From sequence record OM718002.1: 64,000 bases of DNA. One strand, given 5' to 3'. This document shows, one piece after another, positions 6,779-35,448 of this stretch. Below the pieces are notes generated by a model. The model did not search any database, was not told the origin of the DNA, and saw only the letters and a program-made list of their open reading frames with translations. Within the stretch, counting starts at the first letter, position 1; every line of letters begins with the position of its first letter. Made by a program: the position numbers and the translations under genes.

Positions 6779-7840
6779 TTATTTCCAGAGTGTTTTACCA
6801 ATTAGATCATTTTCCGCAATGAATGCATCTAATTGATGTCCATAGTAAAGTAAACTATGAATTTGTTGATTTAGTCGTTCTTTATTTGAACCTAAGAACA
6901 TCTTGTGCTTCTCACCATCAGGTAGTTGATCGTAAACTCGTTGGCAGTACTTCTGTGCCACAACCTTACCAGATGCAAGGAAACGCTCATCACCTTCGAA
7001 TAACTGAGGGATAATATTTTCATCAAGATACTTACTGATTTCAGTATCTAGATCAAAATGTAAATCACAGTCAGATACTTCTACAGGATTTTCCTGCTGT
7101 GCATCATTCCATGGGATGTCCGAACTTTCACTATTGCTATCATATTCACTATTACTTGAGGATGTGTCAGATAGCTGCTCATCAAAAGATGATTGTTTAT
7201 TCTTTTGTTTTTCACGCAAGAAGATAATCGATTCAACAATTTCATTAACAATGACATCTAGACCACGATTAGCATCGACCGTAATAGAACTAGGTTGATT
7301 GATAAGTCGTTCAAAACCTTTATCAACCTTATCGAAGTAATCGGATCCTTTAGATTCATAATAATCAAGGCGCCTATTACTTTTCTTAATTCGTTCTTCA
7401 CGTACTTCTTTAGGTGCAGTCAGGAAGAAGGTAGCTGGCTCTGGGATAGAGTGTAAGGTTCCTTGAAGGATATCCATAAACAATTTTGATAGATATGGAT
7501 TAGTTTCTTCGAAAGGATACACATTTAGAGCATATGTCGATGCAATGAATCGCTCGGTAATAACAATCTTATCTTCTTTAAGAGCAGGTAAGATGATATT
7601 CTCTACATTCATCACTCTATATGCACTATGCATCAGTACATCAAATTCCGGTGGTCGAACATCATTGTGTTTAGGCCAAATCAGCATTTGTCGGATTTCT
7701 TCTGATGTATTTGTACCGCCAGGTTCACGTAGTGTTACGACATCATATCCACGTTTAAGAAGCTCCGCAACAACCATTTTTGTAACGGTCGTTTTACCGA
7801 CACCTTCATTCCCTTCAATACTTACAAATAAACCATTCAT
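6779..7840 (-). CDS. tmk: thymidylate kinase with long acidic C-terminal extension (phiKZ gp188-like)
   Basis: P-loop GNEGVGKTT, REPGGT, ITERFIASTYA, RRLDYYE lid motifs. Confidence 0.95.
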   Translation of the reverse strand: MNGLFVSIEGNEGVGKTTVTKMVVAELLKRGYDVVTLREPGGTNTSEEIRQMLIWPKHNDVRPPEFDVLMHSAYRVMNVENIILPALKEDKIVITERFIASTYALNVYPFEETNPYLSKLFMDILQGTLHSIPEPATFFLTAPKEVREERIKKSNRRLDYYESKGSDYFDKVDKGFERLINQPSSITVDANRGLDVIVNEIVESIIFLREKQKNKQSSFDEQLSDTSSSNSEYDSNSESSDIPWNDAQQENPVEVSDCDLHFDLDTEISKYLDENIIPQLFEGDERFLASGKVVAQKYCQRVYDQLPDGEKHKMFLGSNKERLNQQIHSLLYYGHQLDAFIAENDLIGKTLWK

Positions 7841-8968: not shown

Positions 8969-9463
8969 CTAGTTACTCGATTTGATATATGAGGTACATA
9001 CATCGCCAAAGTCTTCACCACTAGTATCAGCTACAATTGCAACTGGCGACCATCGAGCGGCAACAGCCTCACATACACCGATCGAATTCACTCGACGAAT
9101 CGCATGAGCACCAGTATCAATTACACTGAAACTGAGTTCACTAATGATTTCCACTCCTTTTAGTTCAGCGCTACTATCAATAACTTGGGTACTAATTAGA
9201 TAGTTAGCTGTATCATTATTATACGCAAGTACTAGTCTAAAAACCATGAGGGAGTTATCATTATCGGTGATGCCAGCGACTAGCTCATGATTCGAAGTGA
9301 GTGTATAGATACAACTACTTTCTTGAGTGGTAATTGGTAATCCTGGTGAAGAACTATATACACTAGGTGCATTAGCTGTATGTAGTTCAAACTTATTTAC
9401 AGCGGAGTTAGGACCAGGAACTTTATAACCAATAGGTCGGGCAGTGAAGATTACAACGTTCAT
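8969..9463 (-). CDS. hypothetical early protein (164 aa)
   Basis: AGAGGA RBS; first gene downstream of TATATTAC promoter at 9509. Confidence 0.8.
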   Translation of the reverse strand: MNVVIFTARPIGYKVPGPNSAVNKFELHTANAPSVYSSSPGLPITTQESSCIYTLTSNHELVAGITDNDNSLMVFRLVLAYNNDTANYLISTQVIDSSAELKGVEIISELSFSVIDTGAHAIRRVNSIGVCEAVAARWSPVAIVADTSGEDFGDVCTSYIKSSN

Positions 9464-9508
9464 TATGATTCCTCTTTACTAGATAGTTATTTTCCTAATT
9501 ACACATTA

Positions 9509-9533
9509 GTAATATAAATCTCAAATTTTTTTT
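9509..9533 (-). promoter_or_regulatory. phiKZ-type early promoter
   Basis: Minus strand AAAAAAAATTTGAGATT-TATATTAC; TATATTAC is the published phiKZ early promoter motif; same upstream A-tract as the other two copies. Confidence 0.85.
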
Positions 9534-9546
9534 AATACGATATAAA

Positions 9547-9564
9547 GCCTCCCCGAAGGGAGGC
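9547..9564 (-). terminator. intrinsic terminator, UUCG loop (family B)
   Basis: Minus strand GCCTCCC-TTCG-GGGAGGC-TTTATAT. Confidence 0.85.
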
Positions 9565-9570
9565 AATATG

Positions 9571-10263
9571 TTAATTACCACTATAAGTACCTTCAGTACC
9601 CTGTTCTTTACGTCGTACGAAGCGTTGATGAATTGCACTAAGAGCACGGTCCATTGAATTAATCACTACCTGATTCTCTTCACATGCAAATGGGCCTGCT
9701 TGGTAACCTTCAAATAAATCTTTAACGATTTTAATTAGACAGTCAGCAGTTAGGCCATTTACACCAACTTCTGGAACAAGTCCATTCTGCATTAGGATAA
9801 CACATTCAGTCAGGTTATCACCAGGCATAGCAGCTGGGTTAGTCTGAGCATTATAACCAGTTACCACATAACGTTTAGTTGCACCTGATTTCTGGTCAAT
9901 GCCACTTGCTTCAATATTTAGACCATTTTCATCAAAATGTTCATGGCCATAAATACCTTGCATAGTTACCCATCCACCATCTTCTTGATAAATCCAATCT
10001 ACCCCATTTACATGATAAGTATCGCCTGGTTCAGGGTCAGCTGGAAGATCTTTAGTAGTGGTTAATGCACGGATACGCGCATATTCTTCAATTGCAATTT
10101 GTATATCAGTTGCAGTTATATTCTTCTCAGTTTCAGAAGCTTCGTCATGTTGTGATTTATCACTACCTTCCTTTTGGTCATTATCCATATCAGAAGCATC
10201 TACTGTACTTTTAGCTTCTTTACTTTCTAAGGAAGCTAACCACTCAAGATTAGGTTTAGACAT
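9571..10263 (-). CDS. Tad1-like anti-defence nucleotide-signal sponge domain fused to acidic N-terminal region (about phiKZ gp184 position)
   Basis: C-terminal ILMQNG..PEVGVNGLT..CLIKIVKD...YQAGPFACEEN...ALSAIHQRFVRRKEQGTEGT matches the Tad1 family pattern; GAGG RBS precedes Met at 10263. Confidence 0.8.
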   Translation of the reverse strand: MSKPNLEWLASLESKEAKSTVDASDMDNDQKEGSDKSQHDEASETEKNITATDIQIAIEEYARIRALTTTKDLPADPEPGDTYHVNGVDWIYQEDGGWVTMQGIYGHEHFDENGLNIEASGIDQKSGATKRYVVTGYNAQTNPAAMPGDNLTECVILMQNGLVPEVGVNGLTADCLIKIVKDLFEGYQAGPFACEENQVVINSMDRALSAIHQRFVRRKEQGTEGTYSGN

Positions 10264-10270
10264 ACTTACC

Positions 10271-10576
10271 TCAATAAATGAAACCACCAATGTAAAGTGA
10301 CACTACAACATCGGCAACCCGAGGGTCTTGTGAATATTTAGATTTGACTAGTTTAATAAGTTCGGCTCGATTTTTAATGAAGCCTAGTTTCTTATTATCA
10401 ATTTCTTCAGCTTCAATTAGGAAGTCATTTAACTTCTTCTTACTACCCAGTACATTAATCACCATTTGATCAATAACTGCATTAGTATTTGATAGTTTAG
10501 TTAACTCTTGTTCAAAAACTTCCTTACGTCCTTCTGATCCAATTAGAGCTAGACCGATCTTTTTAAGTAGAGACAT
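10271..10576 (-). CDS. hypothetical protein (101 aa)
   Basis: ORF with AGG RBS directly upstream of the Tad1-like gene. Confidence 0.8.
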   Translation of the reverse strand: MSLLKKIGLALIGSEGRKEVFEQELTKLSNTNAVIDQMVINVLGSKKKLNDFLIEAEEIDNKKLGFIKNRAELIKLVKSKYSQDPRVADVVVSLYIGGFIY

Positions 10577-10634
10577 GTTAATTACCTATTACATTGGTTT
10601 AAGAATGGTTACAATAAATAACTATTCCAAGTAT

Positions 10635-19395
<8,761 letters not shown>

Positions 19396-19470
19396 ATTAA
19401 ACTCCATTGACGATTAGTAAAGTATCATATCGTTGTTTAACTTAGTATTACCAAAATAGGAAAATAGAAA

Positions 19471-28120: not shown

Positions 28121-28933
28121 ATGCAACCATATTCTAATTTTTCTGGTTTGCAACAGCGTACTAATAACCAAGTAGTTATCGGCAGTGATATGTTAGCCGG
28201 TACTAATAAAAAAGGTGTATTAGTACCTGATGCGGATGGTTACTATCTAACTCCACTAGGAGCTTATGGTACCCGAAATTCAGCTGGTATGTTCTATGAA
28301 ATGGCATCCGGCGTATCTATGTTTAATCCAGACTCACCTTTAATGCGCCGTGTTAAAAAGGGTGTTCTATTCATGGAATACAAACACCCTGAACCCTATC
28401 GTAAAGATGGCACACGGATGAATGAACATGAGTACCTAATGCGAATTCGTCAAATCGATGATGATCGTGTGTGTGCGCATATTAAGGAACTTATTCTGGT
28501 TGATTCTACAGATGAGAAAGGTCTTCCTATTAAACTAGTACTTGGCAAATGCAAACCATACGGTCCTTTTGGTAAGTACTTCGAAGCATCTATTACCAAT
28601 CCTTCTCAGAATACTTATTGCTCGGTAAGGTCAATAACTCAAGATGATCCTATGCGCGGTATCAAATATACCCGTGAGATTTCAACTTGGGATATGGTTG
28701 GGGAAGGTGGTATTTACGGTGCTAATAAATGGAATTCCCCTGCATTAGAGAACTATGAAGATCAATTAATGGTTATCACGCCTGATACTCTATATCAGGT
28801 ACAGCGTGAACGTGAACGTCAAATTAACATGGGTTTTGAATGTTCTGATATCACCAATGTGACAGATCTAGCGAAAAGTCTTGGCTGGGATATTTCACCA
28901 GTTAAACATAGGCGCCCTGGCTTCATGCGTTAA
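28121..28933 (+). CDS. gp175: prohead (head maturation) serine protease
   Basis: 270 aa; herpes/T4 gp21-like catalytic motifs EYKHP, CSVRSIT, TWDMVGEGG. Confidence 0.9.
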   Translation: MQPYSNFSGLQQRTNNQVVIGSDMLAGTNKKGVLVPDADGYYLTPLGAYGTRNSAGMFYEMASGVSMFNPDSPLMRRVKKGVLFMEYKHPEPYRKDGTRMNEHEYLMRIRQIDDDRVCAHIKELILVDSTDEKGLPIKLVLGKCKPYGPFGKYFEASITNPSQNTYCSVRSITQDDPMRGIKYTREISTWDMVGEGGIYGANKWNSPALENYEDQLMVITPDTLYQVQRERERQINMGFECSDITNVTDLAKSLGWDISPVKHRRPGFMR

Positions 28934-34907: not shown

Positions 34908-34932
34908 GTAATATAGATCTTAAACTTTTTTT
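34908..34932 (-). promoter_or_regulatory. phiKZ-type early promoter
   Basis: Minus strand AAAAAAAGTTTAAGATC-TATATTAC. Confidence 0.85.
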
Positions 34933-35423: not shown

Positions 35424-35448
35424 GTAATATATATCTTAATTATTTTTT
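35424..35448 (-). promoter_or_regulatory. phiKZ-type early promoter
   Basis: Minus strand AAAAAATAATTAAGATA-TATATTAC. Confidence 0.85.

What the first reader, a model, noticed from the sequence alone, without database searches (positions are those of the whole stretch)
9571..10263. Tad1-like immune-signal sponge with a capsid-protease-type leader: candidate virion-delivered anti-Thoeris/CBASS protein
Seen: residues ~115-239 (ORF-track numbering) contain I..Q.G...E.G.NG....L..IV.D....QAGPF.C.EN.......AL....R...R.....GT. From memory this aligns with Tad1 ([63 protein letters not shown]). The domain is preceded by an acidic N-terminus starting LASLE/SK, matching the S/A/G-x-E specificity of protease gp175 encoded in this window. 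The gene follows tail genes gp181-182, no TATATTAC lies upstream of it, and a terminator separates it from the early promoter. Established: Tad1 proteins sequester gcADPR (Thoeris) and cyclic di/trinucleotides (CBASS), and are normally ~125-aa stand-alone proteins. Inference: a late-made, packaged and injected sponge would neutralise signalling immunity from the first minute, complementing the nucleus shell, which does not block abortive signalling systems.
Basis: partly seen in the sequence, partly recalled or inferred. Interest (0 to 1): 0.85.

Follow-up and report, generated by a model that had tools for sequence, protein, structure and literature searches.

The report
Virion-packaged Tad1 sponge, phiKZ gp184 ortholog

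Summary
Window 9571..10263 (-) encodes an intact 230-aa protein. Residues 109-230 are a Tad1 domain: PDB Tad1 chains match at E 1e-5 to 1.5e-6 with the single sequence and 9e-13 with a profile. A domain-only AF2 model (pLDDT 88.6) hits only Tad1 structures (TM 0.65-0.74). The 108-residue N-terminal extension has net charge -15.

The region is 100% identical to Pseudomonas phage Churi, and the protein is 96% identical to PHIKZ184. Published work on phiKZ gp184 calls it Tad1, a head-protease substrate, a minor protein on the inner capsid vertex (PDB 8Y6V), an experimentally validated injected protein, and non-essential.

- Two [S/A/G]-x-E motifs are conserved, not one: SLE13 (17 of 20 relatives) and GHE108 at the domain junction (20 of 20). 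Cutting at the junction would release a 122-aa Tad1.
- The 34 residues ordered in the capsid map lie within residues 55-108, in a beta "wedge", not in the Tad1 domain.
- The gcADPR/dinucleotide pocket residues are conserved. The cyclic-trinucleotide site residues are not.
- Phage Psa21 has the leader and wedge without Tad1. 201phi2-1 and PhiPA3 have the leader and Tad1 without the wedge.

The parts
9571..10263 (-). gp184-type gene: 230-aa Tad1 fusion protein plus stop (stop at 9571..9573)
   Evidence: ORF. 100% DNA identity to phage Churi. 96.1% protein identity to PHIKZ184. Full-length match to PDB 8y6v_I 'gp184' at E 1.4e-150.
10225..10263 (-).
   Evidence: A motif with its E in the same alignment column occurs in 17 of 20 relatives, within a conserved W-A-x-[SG]-[LI]-E context. 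No other ORF in the window carries this leader. Cleavage at this site was not verified here.
10075..10224 (-). Residues 14-63, acidic low-complexity linker (net charge -8)
   Evidence: Composition. pLDDT below 50 over residues 1-63. Poorly conserved and variable in length among relatives.
9940..10074 (-). Residues 64-108, beta-rich 'wedge' module ending in G-H-E108 (the second [SAG]-x-E motif, at the junction)
   Evidence: Predicted strands at 64-67, 82-85, 88-92, 98-100 and 105-111. The 34 residues modelled in 8y6v_I carry one mismatch to the window protein and are absent from the hits of the 109-230 model, which places them within residues 55-108. The junction motif is present in 20 of 20 relatives. 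Psa21 gp249 (91 aa) matches residues 64-107 and ends there.
9574..9939 (-). Residues 109-230, Tad1 (Thoeris anti-defence 1) sponge domain
   Evidence: Sequence and fold evidence. Pfam PF24729 Acb2_Tad1_hairpin is precomputed for the cluster. Pocket residues Y187, N197, R214 and R218 align with CbTad1 F82, N92, R109 and R113.
9547..9564 (-). Intrinsic-terminator-like hairpin ending the gp182-183-184 unit
   Evidence: 7-bp stem with 6 GC pairs, followed by a T-rich tail, 7 nt after the stop.
9509..9516 (-). Early-promoter-like TATATTAC core. It belongs to the downstream gp185-like gene and marks the boundary of the gp184 unit.
   Evidence: The extended AT-rich motif is shared with the sites at 34908 and 35424.
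10271..10576 (-). gp183-like gene (101 aa), immediately upstream. Its stop lies 7 nt before the gp184 start.
   Evidence: phrog_27341. Same position as PHIKZ183.
10635..12629 (-). gp182-like virion protein (664 aa)
   Evidence: phrog_3181 and phrog_20401 'virion structural protein'. Syntenic in phiKZ, 201phi2-1, PhiPA3, Psa21 and a 310-kb metagenomic contig.
12650..12677 (-). Terminator-like hairpin upstream of the gp182-like gene (upper boundary of the three-gene unit)
12685..19407 (-). gp181-like tail-associated lysin / cell-puncturing protein (2240 aa)
   Evidence: phrog_3201 and a transglycosylase family. PHIKZ181 is annotated 'tail-associated endolysin'.
28121..28933 (+). gp175-type head maturation protease (270 aa), the presumed processing enzyme
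   Evidence: phrog_3014 'head maturation protease', E 3e-90.

Best explanation
The gene encodes the Phikzvirus Tad1, ortholog of phiKZ gp184. It is a four-part protein: a short leader (1-13), an acidic linker (14-63), a beta 'wedge' (64-108) and a Tad1 sponge domain (109-230).

Proposed mechanism:
1. The protein is made with the virion genes gp182-183-184 and is built into the prohead.
2. The wedge sits in the inner vertex-binding complex, between gp86 and the centre of hexamer 1. At five complexes per vertex this gives roughly 55-60 copies per capsid.
3. The gp175-type prohead protease cuts after [S/A/G]-x-E. It most likely cuts at both SLE13 and GHE108. The second cut frees a 122-aa Tad1 the size of a stand-alone Tad1.
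4. The freed domain travels with the DNA and inner-body proteins into the next host.
5. There it binds gcADPR, and probably some cyclic dinucleotides, in the conserved F/Y-N-R-R pocket before the phage has made any protein. This blunts Thoeris, and some CBASS, signalling that the phage nucleus cannot block.

Status of each step:
- Shown here: gene, domain, fold, motifs, conservation, synteny, presence of the protease gene.
- Shown by others for the 96%-identical phiKZ protein: virion location, proteolysis, injection, non-essentiality, Tad1 identity.
- Inferred: which motif or motifs are cut, release of the domain, dose, ligand range.
For: - Tad1 homology and fold.
- Orthology to PHIKZ184. The nine substitutions between the two proteins lie outside both motifs and all four pocket residues.
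- Capsid location and gp175 processing: Yang 2024. The chain in 8Y6V has only 34 ordered residues, which map to 55-108.
- Injection validated: Fossati 2023.
- Tad1 naming, non-essentiality, and the 'N-terminus wedged, C-terminus liberated and injected' description: Chan 2025 and a review.
- Junction [SAG]-x-E in 20 of 20 relatives and leader motif in 17 of 20.
- The dual motif plus acidic leader is confined to the jumbo-phage-type subfamily.
- The Psa21 protein stops exactly at the junction.
- 201phi2-1 gp280 was detected by mass spectrometry: record note.
- The protease gene is in the window.
- Pocket residues are invariant or nearly so across 168 relatives.
- No early-promoter motif lies upstream of the gene, and terminators bracket the gp182-184 unit.
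Against: - I could not read the primary sources for the cleavage position (Thomas 2012) or for the phiKZ Tad1 experiments (Li 2024, final version). The 2023 preprint of Li et al. does not mention phiKZ. The exact cut site and the measured ligand range therefore rest on secondary citations.
- About 55-60 anchored copies is a small dose, on the order of 0.1 micromolar in a cell of about 1 fL (my estimate). The injected pool alone may not suffice.
- The cyclic-trinucleotide contacts of CbTad1/CmTad1 (R90/T97; R88/T95) are E195/N202 here, and the hexamer-interface residues are not conserved.
- Chan 2025 reports that a phiKZ nlp1 mutant is sensitive to a cA3-using CBASS and is rescued by Acb2. This fits a sponge without cA3 capacity.
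- Expression timing was not measured. Late phiKZ promoters are too degenerate to recognise by sequence.
Confidence: 0.88

Rival explanations
1. Single-cut model. Only the 13-residue leader is removed at SLE13/S14, and a 217-aa product with linker, wedge and Tad1 still joined is what is packaged and injected.
For: - The SLE13 motif sits in a conserved W-A-x-[SG]-[LI]-E context in 17 of 20 relatives.
- Short N-terminal propeptides are typical of phage head proteins cut by prohead proteases (established knowledge, T4 gp21 type).
Against: - The junction motif is even more conserved (20 of 20) although the surrounding linker is not.
- The wedge is ordered on the capsid while the Tad1 domain is invisible.
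- Chan 2025 states that the C-termini are liberated by the head protease.
- The Psa21 homolog ends at the junction.
Confidence: 0.15
2. The protein is chiefly a capsid cement protein. It exists to stabilise the vertex-binding complex, and the Tad1-like domain is a passenger or a vestige with little role in infection.
For: - PHIKZ184 is annotated 'structural protein' and fills the gap between gp86 and a major-capsid-protein subunit of hexamer 1.
- The wedge exists without Tad1 in Psa21.
Against: - The gene is dispensable by TnSeq.
- Goslar shows no gp184 homolog in its vertex complex.
- The Tad1 domain is the best-conserved part of the protein, with all four gcADPR-pocket positions conserved in 25 of 25 jumbo-type relatives (three invariant, the fourth F or Y).
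- 201phi2-1 and PhiPA3 keep the leader and Tad1 but lack the wedge.
- The literature names the protein as the phiKZ anti-Thoeris protein.
Confidence: 0.05
3. The sponge acts mainly from new synthesis, not from the injected dose. Packaging would be a by-product of the wedge, and protection would come from protein made during infection.
For: - The anchored dose is small, about 55-60 copies by inference from five complexes per vertex.
- Most characterised Tad1 proteins are stand-alone and are expressed in the cell.
Against: - No early-promoter motif lies upstream, and the gene sits in a virion-gene unit. New protein would therefore come late, after TIR or CD-NTase sensing.
- Injection was demonstrated experimentally.
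- The leader and junction motifs are conserved across genera.
Confidence: 0.12

Closest known systems
phiKZ gp184 (PHIKZ184; Tad1 of phiKZ; PDB 8Y6V chain I)
   Same: Ortholog. It has the same 230-aa length, 96.1% identity, the same position after gp181-182-183, identical motifs at residues 11-13 and 106-108, and identical pocket residues.
   Different: Nine substitutions, at residues 23, 39, 43, 45, 48, 54, 75, 177 and 215. None lies in a motif or pocket position. The host genome is phage Churi or a near-identical Phikzvirus rather than phiKZ itself.
Stand-alone Tad1 (CbTad1, PDB 7UAV/7UAW/8SMD/8KBE; CmTad1, PDB 8KBB-8KBD)
   Same: - The fold is the same: an N-terminal antiparallel sheet plus two long helices, TM 0.61-0.74.
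- The gcADPR/cyclic-dinucleotide pocket is conserved: F82, N92, R109 and R113 correspond to Y187, N197, R214 and R218.
- The C-terminal G-T-x-G-T lid region is conserved.
   Different: - Identity is only 20-26%.
- The domain is fused to a 108-residue extension for virion targeting and anchoring.
- The cyclic-trinucleotide contacts (CbTad1 R90/T97) are E195/N202.
- The hexamer-interface residues are not conserved, so the oligomeric state and cA3 binding may differ.
- Delivery is by injection rather than by expression in the infected cell.
201phi2-1 gp280 and PhiPA3 gene 217 (about 190-200 aa)
   Same: They hold the syntenic position after the gp181/gp182 homologs. They share the leader motif, the junction [SAG]-x-E and a Tad1 domain 53-58% identical. 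gp280 was detected by mass spectrometry.
   Different: They lack the beta wedge module and have a shorter, different linker in its place.
Phage T4 internal protein IPI* (packaged anti-restriction protein)
   Same: From established knowledge, not tested here: it is an anti-defence protein targeted to the prohead by an N-terminal sequence, trimmed by the prohead protease and injected with the DNA, so that it acts before any phage gene is expressed.
   Different: - It is unrelated in sequence and fold.
- It inhibits a nuclease (GmrSD) by direct binding rather than by sequestering a small-molecule signal.
- It has no capsid-shell-anchored module.
Acb2 (anti-CBASS 2) sponge
   Same: It shares the Pfam family name PF24729 'Acb2_Tad1_hairpin' and works on the sponge principle. 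It sequesters cyclic oligonucleotides.
   Different: No Acb2 structure appeared among the sequence or fold hits. The matches here are specifically to Tad1.

Membership tests
Tad1 (Thoeris anti-defence 1) sponge family | Significant sequence similarity to experimentally characterised Tad1 proteins | tested here: met
   phmmer against the PDB gives E 1.5e-6 to 1.3e-5 over residues 117-226. The 20-sequence profile gives E 9e-13 to 1e-10 and covers Tad1 residues 6-123.
Tad1 (Thoeris anti-defence 1) sponge family | Tad1 fold: N-terminal antiparallel beta-sheet followed by two long helices | tested here: met
   The AF2 model of residues 109-230 has pLDDT 88.6 and pTM 0.77, with three strands and two long helices. 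The top 20 Foldseek PDB hits are all Tad1, at probability 1.00, TM 0.61-0.74 and E 5.6e-7 to 1.6e-5. The next hit is at E 0.08.
Tad1 (Thoeris anti-defence 1) sponge family | gcADPR / cyclic-dinucleotide pocket residues (CbTad1 F82, N92, R109, R113; Li et al. preprint) | tested here: met
   These residues align with Y187, N197, R214 and R218. Across 168 relatives the positions are F/Y, N, R and R almost without exception.
Tad1 (Thoeris anti-defence 1) sponge family | Cyclic-trinucleotide site (CbTad1 R90/T97; CmTad1 R88/T95) and hexamer interface. This is a property of CbTad1 and CmTad1, not of every family member. | tested here: not met
   The aligned residues are E195 and N202 in two independent alignments. 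None of the 25 jumbo-type relatives has R or K at the first position, and only 14 of 71 stand-alone relatives have R. This lowers the cA3-binding claim, not family membership.
Tad1 (Thoeris anti-defence 1) sponge family | Pfam PF24729 (Acb2_Tad1_hairpin) match | tested here: inconclusive
   The family is precomputed for this protein's cluster and for most relatives, and is marked 'weak' on P0003. The local Pfam-A scan returned no such hit for the whole protein or either half. NCBIfam returned nothing.
Tad1 (Thoeris anti-defence 1) sponge family | Binds gcADPR and protects phage from Thoeris | not testable with these tools
   This is reported for the phiKZ ortholog only through secondary citations of Li 2024. 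The primary paper is not held.
phiKZ-type prohead-protease (gp175) substrates packaged in the head | [S/A/G]-x-E cleavage motif at a conserved, accessible position | tested here: met
   SLE13 is present in 17 of 20 relatives and GHE108 in 20 of 20, both in variable or low-pLDDT surroundings. The motif definition itself comes from the finding. The papers read here confirm gp175 cleavage of gp184 but do not state the motif, and the primary source was not readable.
phiKZ-type prohead-protease (gp175) substrates packaged in the head | Cognate protease encoded by the same genome | tested here: met
   Window 28121..28933 (+), phrog_3014 'head maturation protease', E 3e-90.
phiKZ-type prohead-protease (gp175) substrates packaged in the head | Physical presence in the virion and verified cleavage | not testable with these tools
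   For the phiKZ ortholog: chain I of capsid structure 8Y6V; 'previously verified cleavage sites'; injection western blot. 201phi2-1 gp280 was found by mass spectrometry. The position of the verified site could not be read.

The most novel reading that the evidence does not exclude
The leader-wedge-junction unit may be a reusable capsid-delivery cassette of chimalliviruses. In this reading the wedge docks at the inner vertex, a protease motif at its end releases whatever is fused behind it, and Tad1 is only one possible cargo. Three architectures fit this: Psa21 has leader and wedge only, 201phi2-1 and PhiPA3 have leader and cargo only, and phiKZ has all three parts. A second part of the reading is that the jumbo-phage Tad1 clade is a narrower sponge that keeps the gcADPR/dinucleotide pocket, has lost the trinucleotide site and may not form a hexamer. 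Its fixed dose of about 60 copies per capsid would then set a quantitative limit on how much Thoeris signal an incoming particle can absorb.
Probability: 0.3. Interest if true: 0.45.

Novelty: already known. Interest (0 to 1): 0.15.

Why it matters
A pre-made, injected sponge explains how a nucleus-forming phage deals with signalling defences that its protein shell cannot exclude. It is the only anti-defence protein so far described for jumbo phages. That point has already been made in the literature for phiKZ, so the window adds only an ortholog.

- A sequence-based case that the liberating cut is at the domain junction.
- The mapping of the capsid-ordered residues to the wedge.
- The three modular architectures across genera.
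- A prediction that this clade lacks the cyclic-trinucleotide site.

Tried and rejected
- Local Pfam-A scans of the whole protein and of each half, and an NCBIfam scan, gave no relevant family, although PF24729 is precomputed for the cluster.
- The word-indexed homolog search with the 122-aa domain, and with the closest stand-alone relative P0028, returned almost nothing. The alignment used for structure prediction therefore stayed at 21 sequences.
- The full-length AF2 model was poor, with mean pLDDT 57.6. It was still enough to locate the 34-residue 8y6v_I fragment and to hit Tad1 weakly.
- The primary papers were not available: Thomas 2012 (PMC3323674) and the final version of Li 2024. The supplements of Yang 2024 and of the ONT-cappable-seq paper are not held. 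The 2023 preprint of Li et al. and the 2025 sponge-diversity preprint do not mention phiKZ.
- The bare TATATTAC 8-mer is not enriched in the window. I rely only on the extended motif shared by three sites.
- I asked whether all N-extended Tad1 relatives share the protease-junction design. They do not: a junction motif occurs in 39 of 73, against 26.7 expected by shuffling, and the excess comes from the jumbo-type subfamily.
- A sigma-70 promoter scan found fewer sites than expected by chance (13 against 18) and does not apply to this phage.
- Late-promoter prediction was not attempted, because only a TATG core is known.
Full report
**1. What is at the coordinates.**
The minus strand carries an ORF at 9571..10290, counted from a TTG (239 aa). 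The likely start is the ATG at 10263. It has GAGG 8 nt upstream and lies 7 nt after the stop of the preceding 101-aa gene. This gives an intact 230-aa protein with no internal stop or frameshift. The DNA at 9300-10700 is 100% identical to Pseudomonas phage Churi (OM718002) and 95-99.6% identical to 48 other Pseudomonas jumbo-phage (phiKZ-type) records. The protein is 96.1% identical to PHIKZ184 of phiKZ.

**2. The Tad1 claim.**
- phmmer against all PDB chains returns the phiKZ capsid chain 8y6v_I 'gp184' at full length (E 1.4e-150). The only other significant hits are six distinct Tad1 sequences (8kbb, 8kbh (two chains), 8kbg, 7uav, 8kbe) at E 1.5e-6 to 1.3e-5 over residues 117-226.
- A profile of 20 relatives improves these matches to E 9e-13 to 1e-10 and covers Tad1 residues 6-123.
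- An AF2 model of residues 109-230 has mean pLDDT 88.6 and pTM 0.77. It shows three strands followed by two long helices, which matches the Tad1 architecture described by Li et al..
- Foldseek against the PDB gives Tad1 chains as all top 20 hits, at probability 1.00, TM 0.61-0.74 and E 5.6e-7 to 1.6e-5. The next hit is at E 0.08.
- In BFVD the named hits include 'Acb2/Tad1 hairpin domain-containing protein'. The precomputed Pfam family for the cluster is PF24729 Acb2_Tad1_hairpin.
- The local Pfam and NCBIfam scans found nothing. I record this as an inconsistency between library copies, not as evidence against the claim.

**3. Ligand sites.**
I used the residue numbers given in the Li et al. 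preprint and the printed phmmer alignments. The chain numbering is offset from the paper's numbering by +1 for 8kbh_I and by 10 for 8kbb_A.
- The gcADPR/cyclic-dinucleotide pocket residues of CbTad1 (F82, N92, R109, R113) align with Y187, N197, R214 and R218.
- The cyclic-trinucleotide contacts (CbTad1 R90/T97, equal to CmTad1 R88/T95) align with E195 and N202.
- The CmTad1 hexamer-interface residues are not conserved either.
- Across 168 relatives the four pocket positions are F/Y, N, R and R almost without exception.
- The first trinucleotide-site position is never basic in the 25 jumbo-type proteins (E 18, D 3, A 2, P 2). It is R in only 14 of 71 stand-alone relatives.

From this I infer that gcADPR, and perhaps dinucleotide, binding is retained. 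cA3 binding in the CbTad1 manner is unlikely. The inference fits the report that a phiKZ nlp1 mutant is sensitive to a cA3/NucC CBASS and is rescued by Acb2. It remains a prediction.

**4. The N-terminal extension.**
Residues 1-108 carry 24 acidic and 9 basic residues, net charge -15. Residues 1-63 are predicted to be disordered.

The alignment of 20 relatives (44-83% identity for the full-length group; about 55-60% over the domain only for the roughly 200-aa group) shows two [S/A/G]-x-E motifs conserved in register.
- G-H-E108 lies immediately before the Tad1 domain. It is present in 20 of 20 even though the flanking linker is otherwise variable.

A cut at E108 would release residues 109-230, which is 122 aa, the size of a stand-alone Tad1. 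Other recurrent [SAG]-x-E triplets (A-A-E, A-C-E, G-T-E) lie inside the folded domain and coincide with conserved structural or ligand positions.

Among 73 N-extended relatives found in the 1.84-billion-protein representative library, a junction motif occurs in 39, against 26.7 expected by shuffling. The excess, together with the acidic leader, is confined to the jumbo-type subfamily. N-terminal extension as such is not unusual for the domain: 74 relatives are extended and 71 are stand-alone.

**5. What sits in the capsid.**
Yang et al. [quoted passage not shown] Their description includes the following points:
- gp184 fills the gap between gp86 and a subunit of hexamer 1.
- It is the only mainly beta-stranded member of the complex.
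- It is a gp175 substrate.
- The modelled part is shorter than the cleavage product.

Foldseek shows that chain 8y6v_I has only 34 modelled residues. They match my full-length model at 97% identity, which is one mismatch, with rmsd 1.6 Å. The window protein differs from phiKZ gp184 at residues 23, 39, 43, 45, 48, 54, 75, 177 and 215. The high-confidence model of 109-230 does not retrieve 8y6v_I at all. The ordered piece must therefore include residue 75 and lie within 55-108. That is the beta module with predicted strands at 82-85, 88-92, 98-100 and 105-111. The Tad1 domain is not ordered in the mature capsid. [quoted passage not shown] (gp93, gp184/Tad1)'.

**6. Delivery and function in the literature.**
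- Fossati et al. (PMC10449902) identified gp184 as an inner-body interactor. They validated it as an injected protein, using tagged virions and a western blot of translation-blocked cells.
- Chan et al. list gp184 as Tad1, non-essential by TnSeq and neutral in competition. They call it the only previously known anti-defence gene of phiKZ and cite Li et al., Nature 635:719.
- I could not read the final Li et al. paper or Thomas et al. 2012. The 2023 preprint version does not mention phiKZ.

**7. Context.**
- The gene order gp181-like lysin (12685..19407), gp182-like virion protein (10635..12629), gp183-like (10271..10576) and gp184-like, all on the minus strand, is the phiKZ order.
- The same order is kept in 201phi2-1, PhiPA3, Psa21 and a 310-kb metagenomic contig.
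- Terminator-like hairpins lie at 12677..12650 and 9564..9547 and bracket the three-gene unit.
- The only nearby TATATTAC on the coding strand (9516..9509) lies after the second hairpin and before the gp185-like gene. It shares a motif of about 30 nt with the sites at 34908 and 35424, in line with the AT-rich early-promoter element described for phiKZ.
- The gp175-type protease is at 28121..28933 (+).

**8. Modularity.** This is new here, and modest. Three architectures occupy the same syntenic slot.
- Leader, wedge and Tad1: Phikzvirus and relatives P0003-P0005, P0021 and P0032.
- Leader, short linker and Tad1, without the wedge: 201phi2-1 gp280, which was detected by mass spectrometry; PhiPA3 gene 217; and the roughly 200-aa metagenomic group.
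- Leader and wedge alone: Psa21 gp249, 91 aa, 41% identical over residues 64-107. It ends at the residue equivalent to H107. tblastn found no Tad1 domain in that genome.

This pattern suggests an anchor-plus-releasable-cargo design. The idea was not tested beyond these sequences.

**9. Verdict.**
The novelty class is therefore 'already known' and the interest is low.

- There are two conserved protease-type motifs, not one.
- The extension contains a capsid-anchoring module.
- N-extended Tad1 relatives are common.
- The sequence does not support cyclic-trinucleotide binding.

Open points are the exact cut site or sites, the packaged copy number (about 55-60 anchored copies, inferred from five complexes per vertex), the oligomeric state, and the ligand range.

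All residues quoted come from tool outputs or from the papers cited.

Noticed in passing
L004:2357-2632 (Pseudomonas phage Psa21, MZD04_gp249): A 91-aa protein sits in the syntenic slot after the gp182 homolog. It matches residues 64-107 of the window protein (41% identity) and ends exactly at the junction. It is a wedge module with no Tad1 cargo.
   Followed up: partly
L006:1366-1746 (Bacillus phage Bc431v3 orf166); also Bcp1, BCP8-2, JBP901, Z3 and QCM8, and Klebsiella phage Eowyn: Stand-alone Tad1-like genes of Bastille-like Bacillus phages and of a Klebsiella phage are annotated '(putative) structural protein'. If that label rests on virion mass spectrometry, packaging of Tad1-type sponges would extend beyond jumbo phages. 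The annotation appears to be by similarity only.
   Followed up: no
window 9509-9516, 34908-34915, 35424-35431 (all minus strand): Three TATATTAC sites share an extended AT-rich upstream motif of about 30 nt and lie in front of minus-strand genes. The other five 8-mer matches do not share it. The bare 8-mer is not enriched (8 found, 6.3 expected).
   Followed up: partly
window 9574-10263 (-); Pfam PF24729 (Acb2_Tad1_hairpin) is precomputed for this protein's cluster. The session's Pfam-A copy returns no hit even at E up to 10. The two library copies or their thresholds disagree.
   Followed up: no
window 6779-7840 (-): A thymidylate-kinase-like protein of 353 aa has a long acidic, serine-rich C-terminal extension after the kinase domain. 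It corresponds in position to PHIKZ188.
   Followed up: no
P0028 (131 aa): The closest stand-alone relative of the domain (42% identity) is encoded on a 261-kb contig. Some large phages may therefore carry an unfused Tad1.
   Followed up: no
NC_028999.1 (PhiPA3), PP968062.1, OU343167.1, PQ287642.1; PhiPA3-type genomes show two separate tblastn places for the query. The second place was not examined. It could be a second Tad1 domain or a separate wedge module.
   Followed up: no
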